From assembly GCA_020891255.1 (NCBI GenBank), contig BQFW01000001.1:434001-498000 (forward strand): a DNA stretch of 64,000 nt. Reading direction: 5' to 3'. The notes under the pieces are model-generated. The model worked only from the letters and a program-made list of their open reading frames with translations. It was not told the origin of the DNA and ran no database searches. Source of the stretch: Entomortierella parvispora E1425 (lineage: Eukaryota > Fungi > Mortierellomycota). Numbering within the stretch: the first letter of the stretch is position 1; each line of letters opens with the position of its first letter. Positions 23,196 through 59,899 of the stretch are shown here, piece by piece. The position numbers and the translations under genes were made by a program.

Positions 23196-26100
23196 TCAGC
23201 ATCGAGTCGGATTTGTAGAATCCAACGCCCTCTGTTGAACAGCCTTGAAGATTGACGGTATGGGCCCCTGTGTGCTACTACCCTCGGGAACCAGTTGCTG
23301 TTCAAGCTCGCCTTGCTCCGTGTAGAGGCGCAATCCACTATCGTGGGCTTGTAAAGATATGACATTATCGCAGCTGTAAAGAAACAGGTGGTTATTAAAA
23401 AGAGAGTCGATCTCCTCTTCGGACAGCTGTGGGATGGAACTCAACAGTTGGCGGTGGTGGCCTCCAATAAACAACGAGCCGTAATGTCGAACGTTCCTGT
23501 CATTGTCTGTGAGGACGGCAATCATAAACCGGATAGATGATTCCTGCAGGAATGAGGCATGGCCAAATGTTAATACTTCTGCCAGGTCGACATTCTCATG
23601 GAGATTCTTGAGACTCTTGAGAGTGACAGCGATCGAGTCGATGACTGATTCCGGCAAGGGGGAGTACTTTATCAAGGCCGTAATTGCCGAGTGCCTGACG
23701 TGCACATTATCGTCCTGGACTGTTGCGATGAGGGATTGAATTTCTGAATCTCGCAACTCAGGCTGCTCGAACAATACCGAGGATGCCGAGAGCCTGATTT
23801 GATAACGGTGATCCCTGAGTATGGTGATGATTGACTGCATAGCTGATTCCGACAATGGGGATTGCTTGAGTAATACAGATGCCGCTGAAAACCTGACCTC
23901 GTCATCTTCTTCCTTGAGTGCGGCAATGAGGGATTGGATGGCCGGTTCCTGCATCCGAGATTGCTTGAGCAATACTAACGTTGCAGAGTATCTGGCATTT
24001 TCATCACAACCCTTGAGTGTGGTAACAAGCGATTCGATGGCTGCTTCCTGCAACGGGGATTGTTTGAGTAATGTCGTTATTGCCGAGAGTCTGATAACTT
24101 CATCGTCGGCTTTGAAAGCAGCGATGAGGGACAGGATGGATGATTCCTGCAAAGGAGACTGCTCAAGTAACGACGATGCTGTCAAGGACCTGACATCTTT
24201 ATCGTCATCCTTGAGCGTACCGATGAGGGAGTGGACGGCAGATTCCTGTAACGGAGGCTGCTCAAGTAATACCGATACCGCTGAAGACCTGACATTTTTA
24301 TCACCATCCTTGAGAGTGGTGATTAACAACTGGATGGCTGACTCCTGCAACGGAGAATGCTTGAGCAATGCCGATATTGCAGAAGATCTGACGATTTTTT
24401 CATCATCCTTGAGAGAGACAACCAGGGAGAGGATAGCTGATCCCGGCAACGAAGACTGCTTGCTTAATGCCAACACTGCTGAAGACCTGACATCTTTATC
24501 GTAGTCCCTGAGTGTGGCGACAAGAGGCTGAACGACTGACTTCCGCAGCAGAGATTGTCTGCCTAAAGCTGATGCTGCTGAGGCCCTGACATTTTTATCA
24601 TCATCCTTGAGTGTGGCGATGGCGGCCCGGTGAACCGATTCTGGTAACAAAGGATGTTTGCCTAATACCGATATTGCTAGAGACCTGACTTGCCAATCGT
24701 CGTCCTTGAGTGCGGAAAGGAGGGACTGGATAGCTGATTCTGACAACAAGGACTGCATGCCTAATACCGATGCCGCTGACGACCTGACCCTCGTATCATC
24801 GTCCTTGAGTAGGGTGATCAGGTACTGGATGACTGATTCCGATAACAAAAGTTGTTTGCCCAAAGCTGATGCTGCTGCAGTCCTGATGTTTTCGTTGTCG
24901 TCCTTGAATACAGAAATGAGCGCCTGGGTGGCAGATTCTGACAATACAGAGCGTGAGCCCAAAGTATGAATGAGGGAGATCTTGCTCGAATGTGCAGATC
25001 CTATCGCTTCCACCAGAAGATCCTCAGGGAACGACAGTCGGCAGCCTAGCATGCTTCTGCCAAAGTTATTTTGACGCGTGCGCATCTCCAAGTACAGCCA
25101 CCGCATGAGCTCTGATTCCAGTGCCTCTCGGACTGGAGTGTCCAATCGAGCTCGAGCTTCAGTCAGGCAAGAGGCCAGGATCTGCTGATGGCGTCCTCCA
25201 ATCAAATCGCGCGGCTCTCCTTGTAAAAGTCCAAAAAAAGTCGCTCAGTCGCTCTTCTTCCAGCAGACCCGCCATCATGGACCACACGATCTCATATTGG
25301 GGATCATATTTGTGGCGGTGAACAAAGACGGTTAACGCCTCCGTGGTCATCATCCCCGCTGAGAAGTGCGGCTGTTGAGGTTGAAAATGGCGCGCGATCC
25401 ACGTGGCAGCAAAAAATTCCTGGAAAGTCAGGTGTGGAAAATGCCATGCTTGTCGAGAACTGCTGTTTTTGGAGTCCAAGTCTGAGTCTGCTGTGTGCAG
25501 AAACGAAGTCTGCTTCAAGATTTGAAAGAGTTGAGGAGGTGAGAGGTGTTGGTTGTTGTCTGTTTCATCCTCGAGGTCTTCAAATGCACGGAGCAGGTCC
25601 TCTTTGTCAAATTCGATTTGGTGATTGTTGGTCATCCCTTTGAACGCGAGATGGCCAAGGTGCTGCAGCTCAATCGCCATAAGCTTATCGATCCTTTTGG
25701 GTTTTAAATCGACGATCTGTTCTTCTGTCAAATTCATCCCGCCAATGGTCTTCTTGAGGAGAAGCGCGTCTTTGCACCAAAGCTTTCGCACCATCAACTG
25801 ATACAGCTGTGTCATGGTGATCGCCGTGCCATCTTTTGGAAGTGAATCCCAGCTGAAGCAGATCACGTCGAGTTGTACAGGGATGTTGATGAGTCCCTGG
25901 ATCAGCGGTGTTTGTTGAATAAAGTCTTGAACTTTTCTAGCTGGCTCAGGGGCGAGCACCTTGAGTACAAAGTCGTTGACGTTCTGCTGACTGAATCCAA
26001 CAGTTTCAAGCTCCAGATCAATCGATGGTAGTAGCTTGCTGTCCAACCCGGAAGGTCTTGAGGTGATGACAACATGTTGTTGCTGAAGCAGGTTCTTCAA

Positions 26101-28866
26101 GAATGATCTAAAGGCCTTGCCCTCATCTCTCTTCGCATCTGCGCCAATTTCATCTAGGCCATCCAAGATGAAAAGAACTCTGCCTCTCTGAGCGCAGATA
26201 GTGAGAGCATGGGCCAGTGCCTCCTGCTCTTCGTCAAAGTCTTCGGAAATAAAAACCATCTTGCGGAATAGATCTTGCAGACTACGAATCTTGAGTCCCC
26301 TGAGATGACGTAGTGGGATCCAAACCACAGTGTCGAACAGCTCCTTCCACAACCCACTTTGATGTGCATGGACTAGTTTCTTGCACAGTGTCGTTTTGCC
26401 AATGCCTGCTCGTCCTTGGACAAGAATTCTTTCAGGAATGCCTTCCTGTCCATTGCGTAGGTTTCGCTTGTTAAAGAGTTGTTCCAGTGGGATCAGTGAC
26501 TGGGTGTCTGTGTTCTGCACCCTTTCACTGCTGGGCATTCGAAGAAAGACGGCCGCCTGTTCTTTGAGTTTCTCCTTTTCCTTTTGCCGATGCTCTGACG
26601 CTTGGACAATCGCGAGATTGACAAAACACGTTTCCAGATCCAGTTCCTCTCCCGAAACTCTGAAAATAAAAAGATCTGGTGCATGGTAGATCCTCAACGC
26701 ACGGTGAATCCTATCGAGACTAGGAGATAAAATGGGACCTGGAAAGCTCTCTATCTTGGCATGGCGATGATTCCGATCCTGGACAGCCTTGATCAGTGAG
26801 ATATTCGTGCTGTAACGACCAGACGAACTTGCTGACTTGTCATTAATGCAAAACGGCAGTTGCTGATGGGACGTTGAGTTCAGATGTGTGTTCAGTTTCC
26901 TCACTTCTTCCAGTAATGACTTGGCCACTAAAACCGAAACAGAGAGACAAAAAAACGCGTCAGGATCTATACCTGTCGCATGTTTTGATTTTTACATGTG
27001 ATATGGGGTTGGCATATTGTTCGTACATACCTTCAAAGTGCATGTCATTGTTGGATAACACGTTGATAAGCACGTCAAAGACGACCTGATCAATCTTTTC
27101 CTGCCGAATCCAAAGTCCATTGTCCATATAGAGAGCTCCAAGGAAAGAAATTGCATCTTGCCTTGAGTTCAGGCTCCACTGGGTATGGACTGCAAACTGG
27201 CCAAGTAGCTGGCAGATTCCCCATTGAAATATGAACTGGTGTCGGCACGGCGTAGTGGTAACCAGCTCCTTGAACTGCACGAGTCGGCCAGTTTCAATAT
27301 ACCATTCTGCTGTTCGGAGGGCGCGGTACCAAGCACTCTTAAACTTCAACCCTTCCTTCACTGTGAATGTAGAAGTCCCACCGTCCTCGATTGTTCTCAG
27401 AATGCCTTTGAGGTTCCTGACGCCTGCTTTGCCAACGTCATAGAGTCTCTCCAAGCTTTCGAGTATGTCTTTGAGTTCCCTCGGGTCAGGTATTTTGGCC
27501 AATCCTGCGCCGCCTTTAAGCACCAGCCATAGTCGTCTGAATCCTGCATGCCAGATATCATCATCGTCAGACACATTGAGCAATGCCTGGGTAGCGTACT
27601 TGGCTTGGAATGCCAAATAAGGGTTATCACTCGACTCTGACCCTCGAAGAAGTTCTGACAATGGTCCATGAAGGTTGACGCGATCGACATCTCCGACATC
27701 GGCATCCACCATTGCGTCCAGAACCCGCGATGCTGCCAGCAGCAGGATATGGTATTGACGGTCCATAGAGTGGATAGATTGCAGTCGCCTGTGCAGGCAC
27801 CGGAGAATGGTTACAAGGTCGTTTGGTTCCATGGATCCTGGCGCTGCTCCCTGAATCGCCTTAGCCAACCCATCCAGAGAATGCAAATGTAGAATCTCTG
27901 ACTCATTCACGGTGTCGATGAACGTTTTGATGAGAAATCGCGAATGATCTCTGTTGAGCACAGGAGCCAAATGGATAACCTCGGCGATTGCAGTAGCATT
28001 CTTCATAATGTCCTTTGCAAATGACTGAATGACTTGAACGGACAAGCGTTCCAGGCGTTCTTTCTCCTCCGAGTCATTCAAGGTGTTGAGTCGCCACTTG
28101 AGCTCATCTGGCGGAAGCTTGTCCTCTTGAAGTGATGGCTGTAAAAGAGCAAGGCAATAGGCGAGTTGTCGTGTGCTCCCCAATGACTCGCCCTTACTAG
28201 GCAATGGGAAAAAAGGGAACTCAGGAACCACATTATCACTAAAGAATGATGGAGACCCCGAGTCCACAGTTCCAGCCACAATTGAAACAGCTGCCTGAGA
28301 GGAGATTGTGGGCAGGTACTGAGGAGTGGAGGCAGCGCTAGACATAGTTTCAGTGGAGGTGGTGCAAAAAGTGGCAGTAGAGGCAGAGTTGATTGTTGCT
28401 GCTGAGGAGCTCCAGTAGTTGATTCCTGCTTGGGCGATTGCTGTAGAGAATCCTGCCCCCATAAGAGATGGCGCGATGGTGGCTGAATAAAACCTCATTC
28501 TCTCATCGCGCGATTGCCTGGCAGGAATACAAATCCATATGGTCAGTATACAGCGCGGCTTCTCGATGCTGACAAGAGACAAAACCCCTCAACATACCTC
28601 AAAGGATCTGCTTGCAGTCTACACTTGGTAGCCTTTTCCTGAAACTGTTTTCCCGCATGATCAAGTGCCGCGGCGAGGTCTAGGAACGCAACAATCATCT
28701 CCTCCAGATGGGTGGGGTCCGTTCTAATAACATCGACGTTGGCAAGGGCCTTCTTTGCAGCCCGATAGTGCTTCATGACCTCAAACTCAGAACCTCGAGC
28801 TTTTCGAACCCCTTCGGTGTTGGCTTTTGCTTGCATCAAAGCATCCTGTGCAGAAAGATAGGGCAT
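23196..28866 (-). pseudogene. NLR-like gene 1: helical N-terminus / Arm-like region / NACHT / ~15 HEAT repeats; +1 frameshift
   Basis: Exons 28866-28598, 28517-27031 and 26927-23196 with GT-AG introns that join in frame. Walker A GRAGIGKTT, Walker B LFILDGLDE, VITSRP. An A7 run at 25233-25239 shifts the frame before GEPRDLIGGRHQQ. Confidence 0.85.
23460..24908 (-). repeat. Coding array of 99-bp (33-aa) HEAT/PBS-lyase-like repeats, NLR1
   Basis: About 15 units of LKDDDxxVRxxAxxxLxxQSxLxESAIQSLIxT. Confidence 0.9.
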
Positions 28867-33026: not shown

Positions 33027-33357
33027 ACTAGCGCACGGTGCCAAATGAAGTTTTCAACTCTGGGTTGGTGCCGCATGCCACCGACATGGAGACGCCAAAG
33101 AAGAAAAACCAGTCAAAAGGGTAGGCGTGGTTTTTGGCTGAATGCGCCAGTGATAAAACATCACTGGGCACAGAGCGTTATACATCAAGAAGCCCACGGG
33201 CATGCCGACTAGCGCACGGTGCCAAAAGAAGGTTTCAACTCTGGGTTGGTGCCGCATGCCACTGAATGAGACGCCAAAGAAGAAAAACCAATCAAAAGGG
33301 TAGGCGTGGTTTTTGGCTGAATGCGTCAGTGATAAAACATCACTGGGCACAGAGCGT
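33027..33357. repeat. ~150-bp direct repeat pair, each containing a CAGTGAT-AAAAC-ATCACTG hairpin
   Basis: Copies at 33027-33178 and 33208-33357 with few substitutions. Confidence 0.88.
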
Positions 33358-35342: not shown

Positions 35343-38300
35343 TCATTTAGAATATGGGTACAACGCCATCTGTTGGACAGCCTTGAAGACTGATGATATT
35401 CTATCCTGATTGTTGCTACCATCTGAAGCAAGTTGGAGTTGCAGCTCGCCTTGCTCAGTGTAGAGACACAATCCATTGTCGCATGCCTGTAAAGACATAA
35501 CATTACTGCAGCTGTAATGAAACAAGTGGTGGTTAAAAAGACAAAATATCTCATCTTCTGATAGGATTGGGAGTAACCTGAACAGCGATGGGCTATGACA
35601 TCCAAGAATCTCTGAAACATAGGATGGAACTTTTTTCTCGTCTTCATTGACCATGGCGACGAGGGAACGGATGGCTGTTGACTCGATTGAAGACTGCCTG
35701 CCTGAAGCTGATACCGCTGCAGATCTGGCAAACATATCATGATCTTTGAGTGCAGAGATGAGGGACTGAACGGCTGATTCTGAAAGCGAAGGCTGATCGC
35801 TTAATATAGATGCCGATAAAGACCTGGCTTCCCAGTCATCATCCTTAAGTCCAGCAATGAGGGCTTGGATAGCTGATTCCGGTAACGAAGGCTGCTTGCC
35901 AAGTGCCAATGCGACTGAAGTCCTGACTTGTTCATTGTCATTCTTGAGAGTGGCGATGAGGAACTGGATGGTTGACTCCGGCAAAGAAGACTGTTTGCCT
36001 AATATTAACGCAGCTGAAGACCTGACTCTTTTATCGTCATCCTTGAGTGTTTCCATGAGGGATTGGATGACTGACTCCGACAAAGATGACTGTTTTCCTA
36101 ATGCCTCTGCTGCTGAAGACCTGACGTCTTTATCATCCTTGAGTGCGGTGACGAGGGCATGGACAGCTGGTTCCGACAATGAAGAATGCCTGCCTAATGC
36201 CCGTACTACTGAAGACCTGACATCGCATTCATCATCCTTGAGTTTAGCGATAAGGGACTGAATGGCTGACTCCGACAAAGAATTATGGTTGCCTAATGCC
36301 GATGCCGCTGAAGACCGGACTCTTTTATCATCATCTTTGAGTGTGGTGACGAGGGACTGTATAGCTGATGCCGACAACGAAGACTGCTTGCCTAATGCCT
36401 CTGCTGCTGAAGACCTGACGTTTTTATCTTTATCCTTGAGTGCTGCAATGAGAGACTCGATCGATGATTTAGGGAGCGAAGACTGGTTGCCTAATGCCGA
36501 TGCTGCTGAAGACCGGACTTTTTTATCATCATCTTTGAGTGCGGTGACGAGGGACTGTATAGCTGATGCCGACAACGAAGACTGCTTGCCTAACGCCGAT
36601 GCTGCTGAAGACCTGACTTTTTTATCTTTATCCTTGAGTGCTGCAATAAGGGACTCGATTGATGATTTAGGGAGCGAAGACTGACCGCGTAATATCAATG
36701 CTGCTGAAGACTTGATATTCCAGTCGTCACCCTTTGTAACGACAGACTCGATATATGATGTCGGCAACGAAGACTGCCTGTCTAATGCCGACGCTGCTGA
36801 AGACCTGACAAATTTCTTGTCGTCCTTGAATGTGGCAATGAGGGACTGTATGGCTGATTCCGGTAATGCAGACTGCTTGCACAAAATTGATACTGCTGAA
36901 GACCTGAAGATTATATCGTCATCCTTGAATTTGGATATGAGGAACTGGATAACTGACTCCGGTAATGAAGAATGATAATCTCTTAATGTCTCTACTGCTG
37001 ACCATTGGATAGTTAGGTTGTCATCGTTGAGTGCGGTGATGAGGGGATGGATAGCCAATTCCGGCAACGGAGACTCGAGGCCTAATTCCTCTACTGCTGA
37101 AGACCTAACGTATTCATCCTCATCGTCATCCTTATGGAGATGAGGGACTGGATGATCGATTCTGACAATATGGAGCGAGACCCTAAAGTGCGTATGAGCG
37201 ACATCTTGTTCCATTTACATCGCGTCGAACGTAATGCTTCAACTAGAAGCGCCTCAGGGAATGACAATTGAATGCCCAGCAAGCTTGGGACCTCTAAATC
37301 TTCACGCACATGTATTTCCAGGTGCAGCCACCGCACGAGCTCGGACTCATATGCAGCTACGACCGCTGAGTCCAATCGTGTCCGCGCCTCATTCAGGCAA
37401 GCAGTCAATATCTGCTGGTGGCGTCCTCCTATCAAATCACGCGGCTCTCCTTGGAGCCGTTCGAAGAAACCAATCAATGGATCTCCTTCCAATAGTCCCG
37501 CCACCATCAACCATACAATCTCATATTGAGGGTTGTATTTGTGGCGGTGAAGAAAGGCTGTCATTTCCTCTGTAGTCATCATTCCAGCGGCAGAACATGG
37601 TTGCTGGGGTTGAAAATGACGGACGATCCACGTTGCTGCAAAAAACTCCTGGAATGTGAGATGCAGGAAATGCCAGGCTTGTCGAGAACTGCGGTTTTTG
37701 AGATCCAAAGTTGAATCCGCTGTATGTAAAAACGATGTTTCTTTCATGGCTTCGACGAGGTGGGTAGGCGAAAGTTGTTGGCTATTTGTTGTAGAGTCCT
37801 TCAGATCTCGAAATGCGGATCGTAGGTCTTTTTCCTCAAACTCGATTTGGTGCTGGTTGGTCATGCCTTTGAAAGCAAGATATCCAAGATGCTGTAGCTC
37901 AGTCGCCATCAACTCATCGATTTCCTCGGGCTCATAATCGTGAATTTGTCGCTCAGTCAGCCCCATGCCACCGGCAGTCTTCTTGAGTCGAAGGGCATCC
38001 TTGCACCAAAGCTTCCGTACCATCAATTGATACAGTCCTGTCATGGTGATGGCCATGCCATCTCCTGGAAGTGAATCCCAGCTGTAACAAATCACGTCGA
38101 GCTGTACCGGAATATTGACAAGTCCCTGGATCAATGGCGTTTGTTGAATGAACTCTTGGACTCTTCTCGCGGGCTCGGGATCCAGTACCTTCAATACAAA
38201 GTCTTTGACATTCTGCTGACTAAACCCCACAGTTTCCAGCTCCAGATCGATTGTCGGCAATAATTTTCTGTCCAAACCAGACGGCCGCGAAGTGATGATG

Positions 38301-41098
38301 ACATGCTGTTGCCCGAGCAACATCTTTAGAAATGGTCTGAAGGTATCGCTTTCATCCCCGCCTGTGTCCGTTACAATCTCATCCAGACCATCCAAGATGA
38401 AAAGAACCTTTCCTTTCTGAGCGCAAAATGCAAGGGCTTTGGCCAGTACAACCTGTTCTTGGTGGAGGTCCTGAGCAATAAAGACTTTCTCGAGGAACAG
38501 TTTCTCTAAGCTGCGACTCTTGAGTCCTTTGAGGTTGCGCAGTGGAAGCCGCAATATGACGTCGAACAGATCTCGCCATAGGCCATTCTGGTGCGCATGA
38601 ACAAGTTTCTTGCACAGCGTTGATTTTCCAATGCCTGCTCGACCTTGGACCAAGATCCTGTTAGGAGTATCTTCCCTGCCGTCGCGTAGTCTGCGCTTGC
38701 TGAAGAGCTGTTCCAATGGGATCAACGACTGGGTATCAGTGTCAAGTACTCTTTCGGTGTTAGTCATCCGATGAAAGGTAGCTGCCTTCTTTTGAAGATC
38801 CTCCTTTTCCTTCTGTCGATGTTCTGGCGCCCCAACAATTGCGAGATTGACAAAGCATGACTCCAGATCCAGTTCGTCTCCTGAAACTCTCAGGATAGAA
38901 AGATCTGGTTCATGATAGATCCTGAGAGCCGAATGAATGTCGCCAAGATTTGGAATTGGAGCATTGTCTGGTAGAGCCCCAATCTTTACATGTCGAACGT
39001 ATCGATCCTGAACGGCTTTTAATAGTCTGGTCGTTGGGTTAGAATCTAGATCCATGAATTTGATCCAAATTGGCGAATGGTGGTCGGCAAATGCCTTTAG
39101 GTTTGTATTCTGCTTTCTGATTTCTTCCAATAGTGTGTTGGCGGCTATACAAAAATCGAGAAAAATCAACAGTGTCAGGACCAGAATACTGTGGTAGGTC
39201 ACTGGTTGGTAATCTTGGGTATAGAAATGCCGCTTATGACTGACATACCTTCAAAGTGCGCGTCGTTGCGAGATGTCACAATAGTGAGCATGTCAAAGAT
39301 GACCTGGTCAACCTCTGTCTTCCGATCCCAAAGTGAAATGTCCTTGTAGAGTACTCCAATGAAGGCAACTGCCTCTTGCCGTACCTCAAAGCCCCATCGG
39401 CTATCAGTCACAAACTGTCCAAGCAGCTGGCAGATTCCCCACTGAAACATAAGATCGTGTCGGCACGGTGCGGTTGTTACCAGAGTCCTGAACTCTACTA
39501 GCCTTCCAGTCTCAATATATGACTCAGCCTTGCGAATAGCCCGGTACCAGGCGCTCCTGAATTTCAGACCCTCCTTCACTGTGAATGTTGGGGTACCATT
39601 TCCTTTGATTGCACTATCCATGGTAGCCTTAAGATTCCCGATACCTGATTTGCCAGCTTTGTAAAGTTTTTCCAGGCTTTCGAGCGTCTCCTTCAGCTCC
39701 TTCGGATCAGGCAGTTTGACCAGTCCTGCTCCAATATTCAATATAAGCCAGAATCGTCGAAATCCCGCGTGCCAAATATCTTCATCGTCAGAAATATTGA
39801 GCAGTGCCTGCGCGGCATACTTGACTTGGAAAGTCAGGTATGGGTGATCACTTGACTCTGAGTCTCGAAGGAATTCTGTCAATGGTCCATGAAGGTTGAT
39901 GCGGTCGATATTTCCGATATGAGCATCCACCATCGCATCCAAAACTCGCGAGGTAGCAAGTAGCAGGGGATATAGATGCTCTGCTGAGCGATTGGGCCGG
40001 AGTCGTTTTTTCAGGCACTGCAGAATTGTCTCAAGGTCATCCGAGTTGATGGATCCTGGGGTAGCTCCGAGAATCGCCTTAGCCAGCCCATACAGTGCAT
40101 CCAAATCCATCATCTCGGACTTGTTCAGAGTGTCGATGAAGGTTTTGATGAGAAATCGCGAGTGGTCTCTGTTGAGCACAGGAGCCAATTGGACAACCTC
40201 GGCCACAGCAGCCGAGTCCTTCCTGGTATCTTCAGAAAACAGCTCTAGGACATGAACAGCCATGGACTCCAAGCGTGTCTTCTCGTCCGAGTTATTCAAG
40301 GTGTCGAGTCGCCACTTGAGTGCCTCTGCAGAGAGATCGTCATCTTCAACTGACGGCTGCAGCAGTGCGAGGCAATAGGCGAGTTGGTGAATGGTTTGTA
40401 ATGGCTCGTCAAGACGAGCAAGCGAGTAGGTGGCGGGTTCAGGTTTCACATTCTTGCTAAAGAACGATGGGCAGCCCAAGGCCGCATTAACCGCCGCAAT
40501 CGAGATAGCTGACTGAGAGGAATGATGCGATGGCTGCCGTGGAGCTAAGGCAGTGTCATCATTTTTTGCGGCAGAAGTGGTGAAAAATGACGAAGGAGCG
40601 GCGGTGCTGCTTTTCGTCGCTGAAGAGTTCCAATGTGCGACTCCTCCTTGAGCGATTGCCGGAGAGAACCCCGGTCCCATAAAAGATGGCGCGATAGTCG
40701 CGTCATGGATTCTCATCCTCTCATCCCTTGCTTGCCTAACGGAAGTACAGCTTGCCTGTTTAGCACAGATAGAGGGACTCACAAGAAGTAGCTACCCAAT
40801 ACTCATAAAAAAATAGAAAATAAACTTACCTCAGAGCGTCAGCTTTCTGTCTGCACTTTATAGCTTTCTCCTGTGGGTTTTTTCCAGAGCTGTCCAGCAC
40901 CATGGCAAGGTCCAGGTACACAACAATCATCTCCTCTAGATCCGTCATGTCTGCTGTCATGGCATTGACTTTGACGAGCGCGTGCTTTGCATTCCGATAG
41001 TGCTTGAGGACCTTGTGTTCAGAGCCTCTAGCTTTTCGAGCCTCCTCAGTACAGGCCTTTGCCTTTTCTATAGCCTCTTGTGCATTGATCCGCAGCAT
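35343..41098 (-). pseudogene. NLR-like gene 2: same architecture, ~16 HEAT repeats; frameshift at first repeat
   Basis: Exons 41098-40830, 40735-39249 and 39144-35343. GRAGIGKST and LFILDGLDE present. Frame changes near 37128-37140 (SLISI / KDDDEDEYVRSSA). Confidence 0.85.
35610..37140 (-). repeat. Coding HEAT repeat array, NLR2
   Basis: About 16 units of ~33 aa. Alternating near-duplicates LKDKDKxVRSSA / LKDDDKxVRSSA. Confidence 0.9.
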
Positions 41099-51319: not shown

Positions 51320-52507
51320 TCAAAAGGAAAAAAGGAAAACGCAAGCAAATTTCGATGGAATAATGCGACATCATTCGACAGCAGCCCCACATAGGCGGCG
51401 CACCGACATGTCTTGGACCGACCGCACGACAGTGCAGGTGAGCGATAGCACCGAAAGTAACAAATAGTGGATGCGGCTATAAAGTGAAGCGCCGACAAGG
51501 CTTCCTCGCACCTTCTCCTCTATCTTTATTCATCACAATTCATATTGACACGCCCCGCATTGCCTTCGTTCTATCAACAAAATAACAGGTAACGGAATCT
51601 CCAAGATGCATTCTCCGATGACAAAAGCTCAGAAAAATAGCCGACGAGTGATAACACGTTCGCACGCGGCGTCTCGTCCATGCACCCTCAATACATGTGG
51701 CACTGGCAGCGCCAATCAAGACAAGAGAAAGAGACAGCGAGAGAAGGACGATGACGGTCACGAGGATATGGTTTAGGTCAAACTCGAGAGTATCCGTCCG
51801 CAAAAGGGCCTAAAAGCCGTCGCCACGCCTGCCAGCACTAGCAGCACCTACACAAACAGAACCATCGACTTCAAGAATGCCAAGCTTGGGTCTCCATAAA
51901 AGTCTGCAGACAAAAAGGAGGCCTCAGTTTCAGACACACAGGATGTATGCGGATTGTGTAATGATGCAGGGCACAAATCTGCCGAATGCGAGTAAGTTTT
52001 GCAGACTGTTATATTATTTGTATGTTTGTATCAAGCAAGACCGAAGGTGTCGTGCCTACTAACGACGTCTTCCCTCCGATGCCCATGCGTTAGATATATA
52101 GATCTGTTTGAGACTGGCAACCAACAATTAGGGCTCGTTACGGAATCACTCTCAAAGTCAACACCATTACACTCTCTGGAAGCCAACGCCAACAACGAAG
52201 AGAACCGAATGCCCCTGACGTTGAGAATGGCCTACACTAAGGTTTTGGATTTAGCAAAAAAGGGAGTGCCACTTCCTCGTGATTTCGCAGCTTTCGAGGG
52301 GCTCGGGATCCAAGCATACGAAGCTTTAAAGAACAATAGAGCTCAGGACGTCTCCATTGATGGTGAAGTCATCAGCAAAAGTTATCAGCAATTATCAACT
52401 CTTGCTCAACTTGCGGATGACGGACTTATGGATATTGACACAAGCACCCAGTCATTCTCACCGTTCGAAATACTCAATCTGAATGTCTCAACAACTTCGC
52501 AACGGAA

Positions 52508-53101
52508 ATGTTTTGTCCTGACCAAGAAGCTGCAGTTTGTACAGAAATAGACACCGTTGCCAACGATGATGATGGAGAAGCCAGTCGCGTTATTAGCCAG
52601 AACGATCTCAAGGATTTTGTTCCCCCGGATTTCCCCCCATACGAACTACGACTGAAGCCGGGAATGCCAATCATGTGCATCCGCAACATTGACACCATGA
52701 ATGGCCTCTGTAATGGAACGAGGCTAATTGTCAAGGAAACATATAATCATATCATCATCGCCACTTTCGCAACGGGAGAGAAAGCTGGTCAGCAGGTCAC
52801 CTTCTGCCCGATCTATCACACAACGTTTGAGGACGGCTCTACGCCTGTTCCAATAACACCATTGCAGTTTCCTGTTAAGCCTGCTTTCGCCATGACCATC
52901 AACAAGAGTCTAGGGCAGACTCTCAACCATGTGGCTGTCTTCCTTTCTCAGAGTGTCTTTTCTCACGGTCAGCTGTATGTCGCGCTTTCTCGTTGCACCA
53001 ATCCTGATAACTTGAAGGTTTTTGTAGCAGACGGCGCTGTCAAGGGACAAGAATGCACATACACACGTAACGTAGTATATCGTCAGGTTTTAGAATGGTG
53101 A
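52508..53101 (+). pseudogene. PIF1-family (Helitron RepHel) helicase C-terminal fragment
   Basis: GLCNGTRLIV, FPVKPAFAMTINKSLGQT and VFSHGQLYVALSR. The Walker A region is absent. Confidence 0.9.
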
Positions 53102-53143
53102 ATCAATGGTTGTTCTTGAATAAAGAAACGGGAAAAGAAAAAA

Positions 53144-53176
53144 GCTCGTGGCGATAGCCACGAGCAAATCTGCTAG
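53144..53176 (+). terminator. Helitron 3' terminus: hairpin plus CTAG
   Basis: GCTCGTGGC-GATA-GCCACGAGC, 7-nt spacer, CTAG at 53173-53176, followed by T. Confidence 0.9.
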
Positions 53177-53246
53177 TACTGTATAAGGGTGCTTTCAAAA
53201 GTAAAAAGGGGAGTGTTTGTGACCAATTTGTCCTTTTTTTATTTTT

Positions 53247-56200
53247 TCAAGTGGATTTTGAGACATCCAATGCCTTCTGTTGAGCAGCTTTAAAGACTGT
53301 TGATATAGTATCCATCCTGGAGCTACCATTGGGAGACATCTGTACTTGCAGCGCGCCTTGCTCCGCGCAGCAATGCAATCCGTTATCATATACCTGTAAG
53401 GACATGACATGACTGAGGCTATAGAGAAGCAGGTGGTACTTAAAAAGACGGTATATCTCATCTTCTGATAGGAACAGCAGTGCACTCAATACCGAGGGAC
53501 TATGACTCCCAAGAGTTTCTGAAACATAATTTGTATATCCCGTTTTGTCAACTTCAAGTGCTGCGATAAGAGACCGGATGGCCGATTCCGGCAACGAAGG
53601 CTGCTTGCTTAATCCTGATGCTGCCGAAGACCTGAGACTGCCATCGTCATCCTTGAGTGTGGCTGTGAGGGAAAGAATCGCTGATTCCGGCAACAAAGAC
53701 TGATTGCCTAATGCTGATGCTGCTGATCTCCTGACATAATGAGAGTCATCCTTGAGTGTAGTGATGAGAGACTGGATGGCCGATTCAGGCAACGGGGACT
53801 GCTTGCCTAATGCCTCTGCTGCTGAAGACCTGACATTTCTATCATCATCCTTGAGTGCGGCGGTGAGGGAAAGAATAGCTGGTTCAGGCAATGAAGACTG
53901 CCCGCCTAATGCTGATGCTGCTGAATACCTGACATCGCTATAGTCATCCTTGAGTGCGATGATGAGTGACTGGATGGCTGATTCCAGCAACGAGGACTGC
54001 TTGCCTAGGGCCTTTGCTGCTAATGATCTGACCTTCCAATTGTCATCCTTGAGTGTGGCGATGAGAGACTGGATGGCCGATTCAGGCAACGGGGACTGCT
54101 TGCCTAATGCTGATGCTGCTGAAGACTTAACTTCGTTATCGTCATCCTTGAGTATGGTGATGAGAGACTGGATGGCCGATTCCGGCAACGAAGACTGCTT
54201 GCCTAATGCCTCTGCTGCTGAAAACCGGACACCTTTATCGTCATCCTTGAGTGTAGCGATGAGAGGCTGAATCGCTGATTCCGGCAACAAAGACTGATTG
54301 CCTAATGCAGATGCTGCTGATCTCCTGACATAATGATAGTCATCCTTGAGTGTAGTGATGAGAGACTGGATGACTGATTCCGGCAACGAAGACTGTTTGC
54401 CTAATGCTGATGCTGCTGAATACCTGACATCGCTATAGTCATCCTTGAGTGCGATGATGAGTGACTGGATGGCTGATTCCAGCAACGAGGACTGCTTGCC
54501 TAGGGCCTTTGCTGCTGAAGACCTTACATCGCTATCGTCATCCTTGAGTGCGGTGACGAGAGACTGGATGGCTGATTCTGACAAAGGAGACTGCCTGTCT
54601 AATGCCGTTGCTGCTGAATACCTGACATCTTCATCGTCATCCTTGAGTGCGGCGATGAGCGACTGGACGGCCGATTCCGGCAACGAAGACCGCTCGCCTA
54701 ATGCCTCTGCTGCTGAAAACCTGATATTTTTATTGTCATCCTTGAGCATGGCGATGATAGACTTGATGGCTGATTCCGACAACGAAGGCTGATTGCCTAA
54801 TGCCTCTGCTGCTAAATACGTGGTATACGAATGATCAGCCTTGAGTGTAATGACGAGAGACTGGATTGCGGATTCCGGCAACGGGAACTGCATGTCTAAT
54901 GCCTTTGCTGCTGAAGACCTAACTACGTTATCGTCATCCTTGAGTGTGGTGATGAGAGACTGGATGGCTGATTCCGGCAACGAAGACTGCTTGCCTAATG
55001 CTAACGCTGCTGAAGACTTAACACGACCATCGTCATCCTTGAGTATGGAGATGAGAGACTGGATGGCCGATTCCGGTAATGAGGACCGCTTGCCTAATGC
55101 TACTGCTGCTGAAGACCTGACATCGCCATTGTCATCCTTGAGCATGGCGATGAGAGACTGGATGGCGGATTCAGGCAACGGGGACTGCTTGCCTAATGCT
55201 GATGCTGCTGAAGACTTAACTTCGTTATCGTCATCCTTGAGTATGGTGATGAGAGACTGGATGGCCGATTCCGGCAACGAAGACTGCTTGCCTAATGCTA
55301 ACGCTGCTGAAGACTTAACACGACCATCCTCATCCTTGAGTACGGAGATGAGAGACTGGATGGCTGATTCCGGCAACAAAGACTGATTGCCTAATGCTGA
55401 TGCTGCTGATATCCTTACATAATGATAGTCATCCTTGAGTGTAGTGATGAGAGGCTGGATGGCTGATTCCGGCAACGAAGACTGCTTGGCTAATGCTGAT
55501 GCTGCTGAAGACCTGACACGTCCATCGTCATCCTTGAGTGCGGCAATGAGGGAGTGGACGGCTGATTCCGGCAAAGAAGACTGCTTGCCTAATACTGACG
55601 CTGCTGAAGACCTGACGCTCTAGTTGTTATCCTTGAGTGTGGCGATGAGAGGCAGGATTGCTGATTCCGGCAACAAACACTTCTCGCCTGATACTGGTGC
55701 TCCTCGTAACCTGACAAGCCAACTTTCACCGTTGAGTTTGGAGACGTCATAGTGGATGGCTGATCCTGACAACGAAGACTGCTTGTTTAATGCCCTTAGT
55801 GCTGAAAGCCCGACATTTTCGTCGTCATCCTTGAGTGTGTCGGTGAGAGACTGGATGGCTGATTTCGTCAGCGAAGACTGCTTTCCTAATTCCTCTGCTG
55901 CTGAAAACCTTACATTTTTATCGTTATCCTTCAGCGCGACGACGAGTGACTGGATGGCACATTTCGACAATACAGATCGCGATCCTAAAGTGCGTATGAA
56001 GGAGGCTTTGTTCGAATGCCCGGAACTTATAGCCTCAACTAGAAGTGTCTCAGGGAACGACAGCTGACTCCCTAGAATGCTTCTAGAGAAGATACCATGA
56101 CGCGTACGTATCTCCAATTGCAGCCACCTTGCAAGCTCTGAATCGTACAAAGCCACCACTGTCGGGTCCAATCGAGCTCGCGCCTCGTGAAGGCAAGAGA

Positions 56201-59200
56201 CCAGGATCTGCTGGTGGCGTCCTCCAATCAAATCTCGCGGCTCCCCTTGCAGAAGTTCGAAAAACTTGTCCAACGGGTTTCCGTCTAACAACCCAGCCAC
56301 CATCGACCATACAATCTCGTACTGAGGGTTATATTTGTGTTGGTGAACAAAGGCTGTCATTTCCTCCGTAGTCATCATTCTAGCCGTGGAATAGGGTTGC
56401 TGAGATTGAAAGTGGCGCACTATCCATGTTGCCGCGAAATATTCTTGGAACGTCAGATGCAAAAAATGCCAGCGTTGTCCAGAATTATAGTTTTTGAGAT
56501 CCACTGCCGAGTCAGCCGTGTGTAAAAACGACGTGTCCTTCATCTGCTCAACCAAGTGGGTAGGCGAAAGCTGTTGGCTAGCTGGTGTAGAGCTCTTCAT
56601 ATCTTGACAAGCAGAGCGCATGTCTTTTTCTTCGAACTCGATTTGGTGATGGTTGGTCATTCCTGTGAAGGCGAGATTCCCAAGATGCTGTAGTTCAGTC
56701 GTCATCAACTCGTCCATTTCCACTGGCCCATAACTGTGGATTTGGCGCTCAGTCAGCTTCTTTCCATCAACAGTTTTCTTGAGCCGATGTGCATCCTTAC
56801 AACAGAGTTTGCGCACCATCAATTGATACAACCCCGTCATGGTAATCGTCGTGCCATCTTCTGGAAGCGAATCCCAGCTGAAGCAGATCACGTCGAGTTG
56901 TACTGGAATGTTGACGAGTCCTTGAATCAATGGTGTTCGTTGAATGAATTCTTGGACAGTCCTTGATGGCTCAGGGGCAAGCACCTTGACCACAAATTCC
57001 TTGACATTCTGTTGGCTGAATCCGACAGTTTCGAGCTCCATATCAAGTGGTGGTAGTAGTTTGCTGTCCAACCCGGTGGGCCTGGAGGTGATGACAACTT
57101 GTTGCTGCCCAAGTAACATCTTCAAGAAAGATCTGAAGGTGCTGCTTTCATCCTCAGCCTCTGTAACAATCTCATCCAGACCGTCCAAGATGAATAGAAT
57201 GCTACCATTCTGAGCCCGAGCCGCGAGAGTCTTCGCCAGATCTGCTTGTTCGTGGTCGAGGCATTGAGAGATGAAAATTCTCTCGCGGAAGAGTCCTTCC
57301 AGAGTGCGACTCTTGAGTCCTCTGAGATGACGCAGTGGAATCCAGAGCACAATTTTGAACAGATCCTTCCATTGCCCATTTTGATGTGCGTGAACGAGTT
57401 TCTTGCACAGTGTCGACTTGCCAATGCCCGCTCGTCCTTGAACCAAGATCCTTCTAGGAACATTCACCGTTCCATCACGCAACTTGCGCTTGTTGAAGAG
57501 CTGCTCCAGAGGAATAAGCGACTGGGTGACTGTGTTCCGTACCCTTTCGCCACTGGGCATCCGATGAAATACAGCCGCTTGCTCTTTGAGCTCCTCTTTC
57601 TCCTTCCGTCGGTTTTCAGGTGCCTCCACAATTGCCAAATTGACAAAGCATGTCCCCAGATCCAGCTCCTCTCCTGAAATTCTGAGGATATGCAGGGTGG
57701 GTGCGTGATACCTCTTGAGGGCCGATTGAATGTCACTCAAACTTGCGATTCGAGGGGCGTCTGGTAGGTTCTCAACCTTTGCACGCCGACGGTTTCGATC
57801 CTGAACAGCTTTCAACAGTCTAGCCCTTGGCACTGAATGCCTATCCGGATCCGTGAATTTGAGATTGATCCACACTGGCGAATGTTGATCGGCAAAAGGT
57901 TTTAACTGTGTGTTCTTCCTTGTCATTTCTTCCAATAGCGTCCTGGCGGCTATATATGGAGCAAGAAAAAAAAAGTGGCATCAGGACTGAATATCTTTGG
58001 TATGTTATTCCTGTTATTCCTTGACAATCATGGTGTATAGGTATCTCACCTTCAAACTGTATGACATTTCGGGATTCCACGATAGTGAGTACGTCAAAGA
58101 TAACCTGATCAACCTCCTTCTGGCGATCCCAAAGTGAAGCGTCCTTGTAAAGTGTTTCAATAAAGGCAATTGCCTCTTGTTGTGCCGCAGGACTCCATCG
58201 GCTATCAGTCACAAACTGTCCAAGCAACTGGCAGATCCCCCACTGAAACATGAGTTCGTCTCGGCATGGTGTGATAGTGACCATAGTCTTGAACTCCACT
58301 AGTCTTCCAGTCTCAATATACGACTCGGCCTTGCGTATAGCCCGGTACCAGGCGCTCTTGAACTTCAGACCCTCCTTCACTGTGAATGTTACACTGCCAT
58401 CATGACCTTTGATAGCACCATCCAAGAGTGTCTTGAGATTGCCGATGCCAGCTTTGCCGGCTTTGTAAAGTTTTTCCAGGCTTTCGAGCGTGTCCTTCAG
58501 GTCCGATGGGTCAGGCACATTGGCCAGTCCTGCCCCAACATTCAATAAGAACCAGAATCGTCTGAATCCTGCATGCCAAATATCCTCATCATCAGGCACA
58601 TTGAGTAGTGCCTGCGTGGCATACTCTAATTGGAATGTCAAGTATGGGTGTTCGTTTGGCTCCACATCTCGAAGGAATTCTGTCAATGGTCCGTGAAGGT
58701 TGACACGGTCCACATCTCCGATATTGGCGTCCACCATTGCATCCAAAACCCGCGAGACAGCAAGTAGCAGGGGATATCGATACTCTGGCGAGCGAGTAAG
58801 CTTGAGTCGCTTGAGCAGGCACCGAAGGATACTCTCAAGGTCGTCCACGTTGAGTGTTCCAGGGGTGGCTCCCTGAATTGCCGTTGCCAGACCATTCAAT
58901 GGATGCAACTGCAGCATCTTCGACTCGTTCACAGCGTCGATGAAAGTCGCGATGAGGGACCGAGAGTGCTCTTCGCTGAGCACAGGGGCCAGTTGGACAA
59001 CCTCAGCAACACTAGCCGCATCCTTCATATTGTCCTTGGTAACTGCCTGGATGACATCGTCGACCATAGTCTCCAAGCGATCCCTCTCGCACGAGTCATT
59101 TAAGGTGTCAAGTCGCCACCTGAGATAGTCTTGCGAAAGATCGTTATTTCGTACTGACGGTTGCAAGAGTGCGAGACAACAGGCGAGTTGGAGAGTGGTT

Positions 59201-59899
59201 TCCAGTTGCTCTCCTGGATTTGGCAGCCGATGTATGTTGCGCTTGGGATTAACATTTGCGCCAAAGAACGATGGAGGTCCCAAGGCTGAACTAGCCGCCA
59301 TAACCGAGACAGCTGGTTGAGAGAGACGATGAGACGATTGGTGAGGCGTTGAGGAAGTGTTGACAGCTACTGCGGGGGTAGAGGCGAAAAGCGTTGCATT
59401 GAAGGTGGTGTTGCCTGCCGTTGCTGAGGGGCTCCAATGGGCGACTCCTGCTTGAGCGATTGTCGGGGAGAAGCCTGGCCCCATCAGCGATGGCGCAATA
59501 GCAGCGGCATGGTCCTGCATTCTCTTGTTGAGTTCTTGCCTAGTGGATATACAGTATCATTGTTCAGTATAGGTGCAGTGCCCCCAGCATGCTGTCTCCT
59601 CGATACTAACAAGGAACAAGGGCAAGCTACCTCACAGCACCTGCTTTCTTTCTACACTTGGCAGCTTTTTCCTTTGGCTGTTCTCCCGAGACATCTAACA
59701 CCACGGCAAGGCTCAGGAATGCGACAATCATCTCCTCCAGATCCTTCGAATCGGTCTTCTTGACATCGACTTTGGCGAGGGAGTTCTTTGCGTTCTGATA
59801 ATGCTTGACGACCCTGCGTTCAGAGCCTGTAGCTTTTCGAGCCTCCTCGGTGCTGGCTTTTGCCTGCATTAAAGCCTCTTGCGCTGTGAGATGCGCCAT
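53247..59899 (-). pseudogene. NLR-like gene 3: same architecture, ~24-25 HEAT repeats; in-frame TAG in repeat 4
   Basis: Exons 59899-59631, 59539-58050 and 57949-53247. GRAGIGKST present. TAG at 55622-55620 in LKDNN*SVRSSAASVLGKQ, with the frame otherwise continuous. Confidence 0.87.
53510..55934 (-). repeat. Highly internally conserved 99-bp HEAT repeat array, NLR3
   Basis: About 24 units. Identical blocks at 54079-54209 / 55168-55298 and 53905-54021 / 54400-54516. Confidence 0.93.

What the first reader, a model, noticed from the sequence alone, without database searches (positions are those of the whole stretch)
23196..59899. Cluster of three fungal NLR-like receptors whose HEAT repeats resemble natural alphaRep libraries
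Seen: three paralogs with the same intron positions and about 15, 16 and 24-25 repeats of 33 aa. The scaffold is constant (LKDD-x-x-x-VR-x-SAA-x-ALG-x-QS.LPESAIQSLI). Variation concentrates at the x sites, e.g. NLR3 DGR/YHY/DNE/NGD/NKN/YSD/NWK, then S/I/Y/F/R, then S/L/V/K/E/T. Established: these positions correspond to the randomised binding face of alphaRep HEAT-like proteins, and WD40/TPR/ANK fungal NLRs (e.g. Podospora het-e) diversify the same way. Inference: a HEAT-based diversifying non-self recognition system in an early-diverging fungus, possibly sensing bacteria or endosymbionts. This is the best candidate for an under-described system in the window.
Basis: partly seen in the sequence, partly recalled or inferred. 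Interest (0 to 1): 0.8.

Follow-up and report, generated by a model that had tools for sequence, protein, structure and literature searches.

The report
Fungal NACHT-HEAT immune-receptor gene cluster
Three neighbouring genes of the soil fungus Entomortierella parvispora encode immune-receptor-like proteins whose repeated tail varies at the sites that protein engineers randomise in alphaRep binders, but this receptor family is already published for this species and each of the three copies carries a disabling mutation.

Summary
Three minus-strand paralogs (1828, 1852 and 2153 aa) share two homologous introns. Each has a helical N-terminus, an ARM_5 domain, a NAIP-like NACHT, then 15, 16 or 25 HEAT repeats of 33 aa and a conserved C-tail. 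In NLR3, variation peaks at repeat positions 17, 18, 19, 22, 26 and 30, plus 11 and 12. Five of alphaRep's six randomised positions are among the eight most variable (p = 0.0013), and all top solved-structure matches are alphaReps (E = 3.5e-66).

- **Lesions:** each copy carries one disabling lesion: a frameshift in NLR1, a frameshift in NLR2 and an in-frame TAG in NLR3.
- **Prior publication:** N-NACHT/HEAT NLRs are in print, with 26 counted in this species (PMC12258605). The long helical N-domain and its Mycoavidus relatives are also in print (PMC9815663). So is a Podospora NACHT/HEAT gene with repeat-number polymorphism (PMC4986451).
- **Weak selection signal:** omega at the variable sites is 1.0-2.7 depending on the synonymous baseline, so positive selection is suggested, not shown.

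Mycoavidus endosymbiont genomes hold dozens of full-length homologs, one with the same variable positions. This scan also noted the family on other DNA of this genome.

Verdict: a real but ordinary new member of a known kind.

The parts
23196..28866 (-). NLR1, conceptual 1828 aa. Exons 28866..28598, 28517..27031 and 26927..23196; introns of 80 and 103 nt.
   Evidence: gene model, alignment with paralogs; ARM_5 E=6.6e-56, NACHT E=8e-23, HEAT_2 E=7.7e-46.
25233..25236 (-). NLR1 lesion: one extra T in a T7 run shifts the frame inside the conserved ...DFF|GLLQGEPRDLIGG... segment of the NOD module. Not checked against reads.
23460..24944 (-). NLR1 HEAT array: 15 units of 33 aa, diverged (mean 55% DNA identity between units).
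35343..41098 (-). NLR2, conceptual 1852 aa. Exons 41098..40830, 40735..39249 and 39144..35343; introns of 94 and 104 nt. GenBank model EMPS_00113 (P0190) deletes 129 aa to bypass the lesion.
37134..37135 (-). NLR2 lesion: frameshift in the first HEAT unit (..QSLIS|KDDDEDEYVR..).
35592..37168 (-). NLR2 HEAT array: 16 units (33 aa; some 31, 32 or 34). It includes a recent two-unit duplication (r6r7 ~ r8r9, 93% DNA identity).
53247..59899 (-). NLR3, conceptual 2153 aa. Exons 59899..59631, 59539..58050 and 57949..53247; introns of 91 and 100 nt. GenBank model P0159 ('bilin biosynthesis protein', 2128 aa) deletes 25 aa to bypass the stop.
   Evidence: An X2 contig joins 59630 to 59538, which fits removal of intron 1.
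55620..55622 (-). NLR3 lesion: in-frame TAG at variable position 18 of HEAT unit 4 (LKDNN*SVRSS).
   Evidence: An X2 contig covering 55604-55920 is identical to the window, TAG included. A second X2 contig reads NNRGVR with no stop.
53496..55970 (-). NLR3 HEAT array: 25 units of exactly 33 aa. For units r4-r24, mean DNA identity is 79% and identity to the consensus is 0.79. Units r8 and r19 are identical.
   Evidence: AF2 model of a regular two-helix solenoid, pLDDT 82.
55971..57949 (-). NLR3 NOD module: P-loop NACHT at about 56979-57455 with Walker A GRAGIGKS and Walker B LFILDGLDE, followed by winged-helix and helical domains carrying the NAIP-like motif FLHLTFQEYFAA.
   Evidence: best solved NACHT matches are NLRP3, NLRP1 and fish NLR family protein 1; motif definition from PMC12258605.
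58090..59124 (-). NLR3 ARM_5 (PF23948) alpha-solenoid N-domain, probably the 'NLR_Helical' domain of PMC9815663.
   Evidence: E=2.7e-50; AF2 model pLDDT 70, about 90 in the core; only generic ARM/HEAT matches in PDB; N-termini of ascomycete NACHT proteins in AFDB.
59631..59899 (-). NLR3 exon 1: a 90-aa helical module with no Pfam match, followed in exon 2 by a low-complexity linker of about 100 aa.
   Evidence: omega 0.26-0.43 between paralogs.
53250..53495 (-). Conserved C-terminal tail of about 85 aa after the last HEAT unit. It sits at the extreme C-terminus across the family, Mycoavidus homologs included.

Best explanation
The cluster holds three old tandem paralogs of the N-NACHT/HEAT class of fungal NOD-like receptors, a large family in Mortierellaceae. 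Inferred mechanism, from established STAND/NLR biology: the HEAT solenoid is the sensor, and ligand binds the face of helix B formed by repeat positions 17-19, 22, 26 and 30. Binding releases autoinhibition of the NACHT ATPase. The protein then oligomerises, which brings the N-terminal helical/ARM_5 module together to signal. What that signal is remains unknown. New specificities arise by duplication, loss and shuffling of 99-bp units together with substitutions at the exposed sites. In this strain each copy carries one recent disabling lesion. They are therefore null or truncated alleles, or in part assembly errors, of genes that were under purifying selection for most of their history. Shown: architecture, repeat anatomy, position-specific variability, lesions, transcription of NLR3, and family distribution. 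Inferred: ligand binding, oligomerisation, signalling and any immune role.
For: Architecture: ARM_5, NACHT with weak NLRC4_HD2 and NOD2_WH matches, HEAT_2; NLRP-type NACHT. The NAIP-like motif FLHLTFQE[YF]FAA is present in NLR2 and NLR3, with FPHLTFQEFFAA in NLR1 (definition). Sensor face: entropy peaks at 17, 18, 19, 22, 26 and 30. These align with alphaRep positions 18, 19, 22, 26 and 30, which lie on the concave binding face in crystal structures (PMC3754942). DSSP of the AF2 model puts 18-29 in helix B, so 18, 22, 26 and 30 share one helical face. Heterogeneous constraint: the N:S ratio at variable sites is 70:15 against 45:47 at scaffold sites (Fisher p=3e-6), and scaffold omega is 0.3. 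Unit turnover: r8 and r19 are identical, other pairs are 94-96% identical, NLR2 has a two-unit duplicate, and copy numbers are 15, 16 and 25. Long-term function: omega is 0.13-0.18 in the NOD module and 0.21-0.32 in ARM_5, at dS of 0.55-1.65 between paralogs, with only one lesion per 5.5-6.5 kb of coding sequence. Expression: the spliced X2 contig. Family: 898 clusters at E<=1e-30, many annotated paralogs in E. parvispora and across Mortierellaceae, and the same variable positions in paralogs P0001, P0002, P0003 and P0005.
Against: All three copies are interrupted, so none can make the full receptor as the window reads. The NLR3 TAG is confirmed by a second data set of the same sample. Omega at the variable sites is about 1.0 against their own synonymous rate, so neutral drift at exposed sites is not excluded. 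The N-terminal domain matches no known death, pore-forming or enzymatic domain, so the output is unknown. No allelic or strain data were obtained: other runs under this species label hold next to none of the locus's words, and the one laid (X5) gave only 90-95% matches. Concavity was inferred by homology to alphaRep, not measured on the model's coordinates.
Confidence: 0.6

Rival explanations
1. Structural tolerance only. These are ordinary HEAT-like solenoids whose solvent-exposed helix-B positions drift neutrally while the packing scaffold is conserved. The alphaRep-like pattern is then a generic property of this repeat class and does not mark a diversifying recognition surface.
For: AlphaRep's variable positions were themselves taken from natural variation in this repeat family. 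Omega at the variable sites is about 1.0-1.1 against their own synonymous changes. The same positions vary in distant members, including a bacterial one. Differences between the youngest unit pairs are spread over scaffold and variable sites, and many are synonymous.
Against: Against the scaffold or pooled synonymous rate, the non-synonymous rate at these sites is 1.8-2.7 times higher. NLR3's units stay homogenised at 82% scaffold identity while the eight variable positions are only 26% identical. This is the signature reported for Podospora WD, ANK and TPR NLRs. Copy number differs strongly among the paralogs.
Confidence: 0.25
2. A decaying pseudogene cluster. The three genes sit in a transposon-rich region, are dead, and the repeat variability is partly post-inactivation decay.
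For: Each copy has one lesion. Chromovirus copies lie at 6.4-22.8 kb and a Pif1-helicase fragment at 52508-53101. The intergenic DNA holds no convincing genes. GenBank models had to invent introns to keep the frames open.
Against: There is only one lesion per gene despite dS of 0.55-1.65 between paralogs. Omega is 0.13-0.43 in all non-repeat parts, and scaffold omega within the NLR3 array is 0.3. NLR3 is transcribed and intron 1 is spliced. The two frameshifts were not checked against reads, and one lies in a homopolymer, so it may be an assembly error. A second, stop-free version of the NLR3 site exists in the RNA-like run.
Confidence: 0.1
3. The family serves the fungus-endobacterium partnership rather than non-self immunity. 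It would be a shared or exchanged gene family acting in the Mycoavidus symbiosis, either as bacterial proteins acting in the host or as host regulators of the symbiont.
For: Dozens of full-length homologs at 37-45% identity occur in Mycoavidus genomes, including strain B2-EB (P0117, P0246). Some Mycoavidus genes also carry the ARM_5-like N-domain and the C-tail. In the trees the Mortierellaceae clade (support 99-100) is sister to, or nested among, Mycoavidus sequences. PMC11291939 and PMC9815663 raise the same possibility.
Against: There is no functional evidence. Related NACHT/HEAT genes occur in Ascomycota that host no Mycoavidus. Conserved spliceosomal introns and the deep divergence between paralogs show long residence and expansion in the fungus. 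The tree's root and the direction of transfer are unresolved.
Confidence: 0.05

Closest known systems
Fungal N-NACHT/HEAT NLRs (PMC12258605, PLoS Genet 2025), which include 26 genes counted in Entomortierella parvispora
   Same: Same species. Same NAIP-like NACHT with the FLHLT[FY]QEYFAA motif, C-terminal HEAT repeats and clustered genomic organisation.
   Different: In Sordariales the only canonical N-domain of this class is sesB-like; here it is a helical module plus ARM_5. As far as I read it, that paper does not analyse per-position repeat variability, the lesions or the alphaRep correspondence.
Podospora anserina Pa_6_7270 (sesB-like/NACHT/HEAT) and the highly conserved WD, ANK and TPR repeat NLRs such as het-e, het-d and het-r (PMC4986451, PMC13449251)
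   Same: 33-aa HEAT units with high internal conservation and unit shuffling. In the WD, ANK and TPR cases the variable positions cluster on the binding face of the repeat domain. NLR3's identity to its consensus is 0.79, above the 0.7 criterion.
   Different: Different phylum and a different N-terminal domain. Repeat-number polymorphism between strains and incompatibility function are shown there and not here. Only NLR3 reaches the conservation criterion; NLR1 (0.65) does not, and NLR2 was not measured.
alphaRep artificial HEAT-like binders (PDB 6FSQ, 3LTJ, 4JW2; PMC3754942)
   Same: Near-identical repeat consensus: phmmer E=3.5e-66, and all top solved-structure hits are alphaReps. Natural variability falls on alphaRep's randomised positions 18, 19, 22, 26 and 30.
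   Different: The unit is 33 aa rather than 31, with two extra residues in the inter-repeat loop. Position 23 is conserved (Ser) here, whereas positions 17, 11 and 12 also vary. AlphaRep is an engineered library derived from natural repeats, so the likeness reflects shared ancestry of the scaffold and is not convergence.
'NLR_Helical' N-terminal domain of Pezizomycotina and Mortierellomycetes NLRs, with homologs in Mycoavidus cysteinexigens (PMC9815663)
   Same: An N-terminus of more than 500 aa made of alpha-solenoid stretches. It is detected in some Mycoavidus genes directly upstream of the NACHT (loci L016 and L040) and at the N-termini of ascomycete NACHT proteins in AFDB.
   Different: I could not compare with the paper's own profile. 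Equating it with Pfam ARM_5 (PF23948) is an inference from length, fold and taxonomic range.
Bacterial NACHT proteins in phage defence (bNACHT; bioRxiv 10.1101/2022.07.19.500537)
   Same: NACHT NTPase with a C-terminal sensor. Bacterial relatives of this family are numerous.
   Different: No PADLOC NACHT defence model matches the window protein or the Mycoavidus homologs; only HEAT-repeat models hit. No phage-defence context was established, although one Mycoavidus copy sits beside TraI- and TraD-type conjugation genes.

Membership tests
NLR / STAND NTPase with tripartite architecture | [quoted passage not shown] | tested here: met
   PF05729 at E=6e-20 to 8e-23 in all three genes. GRAGIGK[ST] and LFILDGLDE are conserved.
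NLR / STAND NTPase with tripartite architecture | N-terminal domain, NOD and C-terminal superstructure-forming repeats in one polypeptide | tested here: met
   Spliced models give helical module, ARM_5, NACHT and HEAT in one frame, apart from one lesion each. The GenBank models P0159 and P0190 agree outside the lesions.
N-NACHT (NAIP-like) class of PMC12258605 | HETHS motif FhHxxhQE[YF]hxA (fungal consensus FLHLT[FY]QEYFAA) | tested here: met
   FLHLTFQEYFAA in NLR3, FLHLTFQEFFAA in NLR2 and FPHLTFQEFFAA in NLR1; definition.
N-NACHT (NAIP-like) class of PMC12258605 | Exclusive association with HEAT repeats | tested here: met
   HEAT_2 at E=4.7e-107, 1.1e-61 and 7.7e-46.
Fungal NLRs with highly conserved, diversifying repeats (het-e type) | High internal repeat conservation (similarity to consensus of at least 0.7) | tested here: inconclusive
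   Identity to consensus is 0.79 for NLR3 r4-r24 and 0.65 for NLR1. This is my own proxy, not T-REKS Psim. Mean DNA identity between units is 0.79 for those NLR3 units (0.75 over all 25), 0.65 for NLR2 and 0.55 for NLR1.
Fungal NLRs with highly conserved, diversifying repeats (het-e type) | Positive diversifying selection at sites on the binding face | tested here: inconclusive
   Omega at the variable sites is 1.04-1.12 against their own dS, 1.8 against pooled dS and 2.7 against scaffold dS. The N:S contrast with the scaffold gives p=3e-6. No recombination-aware site test was available.
Fungal NLRs with highly conserved, diversifying repeats (het-e type) | Repeat-number polymorphism between strains | not testable with these tools
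   Other runs under this species label hold next to none of the locus's words, and the one laid (X5) gave only 90-95% matches, so alleles cannot be told from paralogs.
Fungal NLRs with highly conserved, diversifying repeats (het-e type) | Triggers cell death or incompatibility on recognition | not testable with these tools
   No known death domain was found: Pfam, PDB, AFDB, the Atlas and PADLOC give only generic ARM/HEAT matches.
alphaRep-type HEAT-like repeat scaffold | Repeat consensus with variable positions 18, 19, 22, 23, 26 and 30 on helix 2 (the concave face) | tested here: met
   Five of the six are among NLR3's eight most variable positions (hypergeometric p=0.0013). Position 23 is conserved. 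Alignment; positions and concave face from PMC3754942. Concavity is by homology only.
alphaRep-type HEAT-like repeat scaffold | 31-residue unit | tested here: not met
   The unit is 33 aa, with a two-residue gap in the alphaRep alignment at the inter-repeat loop.

The most novel reading that the evidence does not exclude
A fungus and its vertically inherited endobacterium both maintain expanded families of the same NACHT-HEAT receptor, each with the same hypervariable helix-B face. This would be a two-sided recognition contest or mimicry system: for example, bacterial copies acting as decoys for, or sensors of, the host's receptors. The TAG versus stop-free versions at a hypervariable codon of NLR3 would then reflect functional on/off allelic variation among nuclei.
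Probability: 0.1. Interest if true: 0.75.

Novelty: new member of a known kind. Interest (0 to 1): 0.35.

Why it matters
If the variable face is truly under diversifying selection, Mortierellaceae carry a large natural library of alphaRep-like binders wired to an NLR switch. That would be useful for comparing how repeat-based immune receptors generate specificity outside Dikarya, and for asking whether such receptors monitor endobacteria. The class, its presence in this species and its link to Mycoavidus are already published, so the increment here is limited. It consists of the per-position variability map, its recurrence in a Mycoavidus homolog, and the finding that these three copies are interrupted and mis-modelled in GenBank.

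Tried and rejected
- **ORF breaks as introns:** rejected. Both sides of each break align without a gap to intact paralog sequence.
- **The 75-nt GT..AG segment 55694-55620 as a real intron** (GenBank's P0159 removes it): not supported. It encodes repeat-homologous sequence, and the X2 contig 55604-55920 retains it. A minor spliced isoform cannot be excluded.
- **Effector function of the N-terminus:** PDB sequence search, ESM Atlas, Foldseek against PDB and AFDB, PADLOC and NCBIfam all gave only generic ARM/HEAT solenoid matches.
- **BLASTP of the ARM_5 exon against two Mycoavidus N-termini (L005, L002):** no similarity. A tblastn over all loci then found ARM_5-like N-domains in five other Mycoavidus loci.
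- **Mapping variable sites on the AF2 coordinates:** not possible, because the model file is not exposed to scripts.
- **Checking the NLR1 and NLR2 frameshifts against reads:** not possible, because the single read-laying run went to NLR3.
- **'Bilin biosynthesis protein' (GenBank name):** rejected. The PBS-lyase and CpcE matches are repeat-level only and far below the curated cut-offs.
- **Direction of fungus-bacterium transfer:** left open. The FastTree and quick IQ-TREE trees disagree on whether Mortierellaceae is sister to or nested in Mycoavidus, and the outgroup branches are very long.
Full report
**What is there.** The region 23196-59899 holds three paralogous genes on the minus strand. 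Each starts with a 90-aa helical exon, followed by an intron (80, 94 or 91 nt). Next comes an exon encoding a low-complexity linker and a Pfam ARM_5 (PF23948) solenoid, followed by a second intron (103, 104 or 100 nt, always after ..FEG|GT). One long exon then encodes the NACHT module, the HEAT array and a conserved tail of about 85 aa. The conceptual products are 1828, 1852 and 2153 aa. A contig of run X2, from the same sample as the assembly, joins 59630 to 59538. That is removal of NLR3 intron 1 within the one-base ambiguity of the splice site, so NLR3 is transcribed and spliced as modelled.

**Repeats.** NLR1 has 15 units and NLR3 has 25 units, all in perfect 33-aa register. NLR2 has 16 units, a few of them 31, 32 or 34 aa. 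Tandem Repeats Finder reports a 99-nt period with 24.2 copies at 53563-55958.

- In NLR3 units r4-r24 the consensus is LPESAIQSLIATLKDDDGDVRSSAASALGKQSS.
- Entropy is highest at positions 19, 18, 26, 12, 17, 11, 22 and 30.
- The 25 scaffold positions are 82% identical between units, against 26% for the eight variable positions. Identity to the consensus is 0.79.
- NLR3 shows recent unit turnover. Units r8 and r19 are identical in DNA, and r7/r10, r16/r21 and r6/r17/r23 are 94-96% identical.
- NLR2 has a two-unit duplicate at 93% identity.
- NLR1's units are old (55% mean DNA identity) and vary at nearly all positions.

**The alphaRep comparison.** A 264-aa piece of the NLR3 array finds only alphaRep artificial proteins at the top of the solved-structure list (6FSQ, E=3.5e-66). 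In that alignment my positions 18, 19, 22, 23, 26 and 30 fall on alphaRep's variable positions of the same numbers. PMC3754942 confirms that these are the randomised positions, that they lie on the concave face used for binding, and that they were chosen from the natural variability of this repeat family. Five of the six are among NLR3's eight most variable positions (hypergeometric p=0.0013). Position 23 is a conserved Ser, and positions 17, 11 and 12 vary in addition. The AF2 model of the last 790 residues of NLR3 (most of the HEAT array plus the C-tail) is a regular solenoid (pLDDT 82). Helix A spans positions 3-12 and helix B spans 18-29, so 18, 22, 26 and 30 share one helical face. I could not read the coordinates, so 'concave' rests on homology to alphaRep. 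The unit is 33 aa rather than 31.

**Selection.** The evidence is suggestive only.

- By Nei-Gojobori over units r4-r24, dN at positions 17, 18, 19, 22 and 26 is 0.84. Scaffold dS is 0.31, but those sites' own dS is 0.75. Scaffold omega is 0.30.
- By parsimony on a neighbour-joining tree, positions 17, 18, 19, 22, 26 and 30 show 70 non-synonymous and 15 synonymous changes. The scaffold shows 45 and 47 (Fisher p=3e-6).
- Omega at the variable sites is 1.04 against their own synonymous rate and 1.8 against the pooled rate.

Strongly heterogeneous constraint is shown. Positive selection is suggested but not established.

The remaining ORF breaks are not introns.

- NLR1 has an extra T in a T7 run at 25233-25236, inside the conserved DFF|GLLQGEPRD segment.
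- NLR2 has a frameshift at 37134-37135 in its first HEAT unit.
- NLR3 has an in-frame TAG at 55620-55622, at variable position 18 of unit 4.
- The GenBank models bypass these breaks by deleting 25 aa (P0159, which is NLR3) and 129 aa of the NOD module (P0190, which is NLR2, EMPS_00113).
- An X2 contig covering 55604-55920 matches the window exactly, TAG included, and keeps the 75 nt that GenBank removes.
- A second X2 contig of similar depth reads NNRGVR with no stop. Its origin is unresolved.
- The two frameshifts were not checked against reads.

Between paralogs dS is 0.55-1.65. Omega is 0.13-0.18 in the NOD module, 0.21-0.32 in ARM_5 and 0.26-0.43 in exon 1 and the tail. The genes were therefore constrained for most of their history, and the single lesions are recent or, in part, artefacts.

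**Identity and relatives.** The NACHT is the NAIP-like type, with the motif FLHLTFQEYFAA and best solved matches to NLRP3 and NLRP1.

The family is very large.

- 898 clusters at 50% identity score E<=1e-30.
- About twenty annotated paralogs lie on six E. parvispora contigs. One of them, 91% identical to NLR2, is twelve gene numbers away on the same contig.
- Members occur in Mortierella, Linnemannia, Podila, Dissophora, Gryganskiella and Haplosporangium.
- More distant NACHT/HEAT relatives occur in Ascomycota: Apiospora, Conoideocrella, Coleophoma, Exophiala and Trichoglossum.

**Bacterial relatives.** A scan of bacterial genomes found 231 related stretches.

- The best 40 or so are uninterrupted ORFs of 1300-2400 aa in Mycoavidus genomes, at 37-45% identity.
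- Named Mycoavidus proteins also appear among the protein hits, including strain B2-EB.
- Weaker relatives (23-29% identity) lie in other, mostly intracellular, bacteria: Holosporaceae, Parachlamydiaceae, Midichloriaceae and Amoebophilaceae.
- Some Mycoavidus genes also carry an ARM_5-like N-domain directly upstream of the NACHT (loci L016 and L040) and the same C-tail.
- One Mycoavidus gene (L024, 20 units) has its six most variable positions at exactly 17, 18, 19, 22, 26 and 30.
- In trees of the NOD module the Mortierellaceae sequences form one clade with support 99-100. It is sister to Mycoavidus in FastTree and nested within Mycoavidus in the quick IQ-TREE tree (SH-aLRT 92 and 98). A second Mycoavidus clade groups with Ascomycota.
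- The direction of transfer is unresolved.

**N-terminus.** The ARM_5 exon folds as an alpha-solenoid (pLDDT about 90 in its core). It matches only generic ARM/HEAT proteins in PDB (TM <= 0.3) and the N-termini of ascomycete NACHT proteins in AFDB (TM 0.51). No death, pore-forming or enzymatic domain was recognised. The signalling output is unknown.

**Comparison with the literature.**

- PMC12258605 defines N-NACHT/HEAT NLRs, finds them exclusively paired with HEAT repeats in fungi, and counts 26 in E. parvispora. It also notes that the same architecture has been reported in Rickettsiales.
- PMC9815663 describes a >500-aa helical N-domain shared by Pezizomycotina, Mortierellomycetes and Mycoavidus.
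- PMC11291939 argues for NLR exchange between Mycoavidus and Mortierellomycota.
- PMC4986451 and PMC13449251 describe a Podospora NACHT/HEAT gene with conserved 33-aa units and repeat-number polymorphism, and the binding-face hypervariability paradigm for WD, ANK and TPR NLRs.
- In the papers I read I did not find a per-position variability map for HEAT NLRs, the alphaRep correspondence, its recurrence in a Mycoavidus gene, or the lesions in this cluster.
- This scan had already noted the family elsewhere in this genome.

**Verdict.** This is a real, well-described member of a published receptor class. All three copies are interrupted in this assembly.

Noticed in passing
window 6453-22761: Three Ty3/chromovirus-type retrotransposon copies (RT, RNase H, integrase and chromodomain, with CCHC gag ORFs) lie in both orientations immediately upstream of the NLR cluster. 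The strong GC-skew flip at about 12 kb follows their orientation.
   Followed up: partly
window 52508-53101 (+): A 197-aa ORF matches the Pif1 2B domain and the helicase C-terminus. It is probably a Helitron or Pif1-like helicase remnant and lies 150 bp from the NLR3 stop codon.
   Followed up: partly
window 55617-55623: In the RNA-like run X2, a second contig of similar depth differs from the window by two compensating single-base indels. It reads NNRGVR instead of NN-stop-SVR. This version is found nowhere else in the window or in 247 fetched proteins. It could be a second allele or nucleus, an unannotated paralog or an artefact.
   Followed up: partly
window 55620-55694 and 37134-37520 (approx.): The GenBank gene models for NLR3 (P0159, named 'bilin biosynthesis protein') and NLR2 (EMPS_00113) remove 25 aa and 129 aa as introns to bypass the stop and the frameshift. 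The product name comes from sub-threshold PBS-lyase HEAT repeat matches.
   Followed up: yes
window 45947-45993 / 63844-63890, 47911-47980 / 63454-63525, 46131-46272 / 47275-47349: Matching short tandem arrays recur at 45.9-48 kb and 63.4-63.9 kb: a 21-nt TCTTGAT-based unit, a 21/22-nt unit in reverse complement and a 32-nt unit. They suggest two copies or ends of an uncharacterised repeat element.
   Followed up: no
L005:80-4340: In Mycoavidus BRE-AV005 one NACHT-HEAT homolog lies directly downstream of a TraI_2 relaxase and a TraD/TrwB-type coupling protein, so it is probably on a conjugative element.
   Followed up: no
L006, L011, L013, L017, L030, L032, L038, L039: Several Mycoavidus loci hold two NACHT-HEAT genes within about 10 kb, so the family is clustered in the bacterium as well as in the fungus.
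   Followed up: no
window 33027-33357: A 179-nt unit is duplicated in tandem (1.8 copies, 95% identity) in the gene-poor spacer between NLR1 and NLR2.
   Followed up: no
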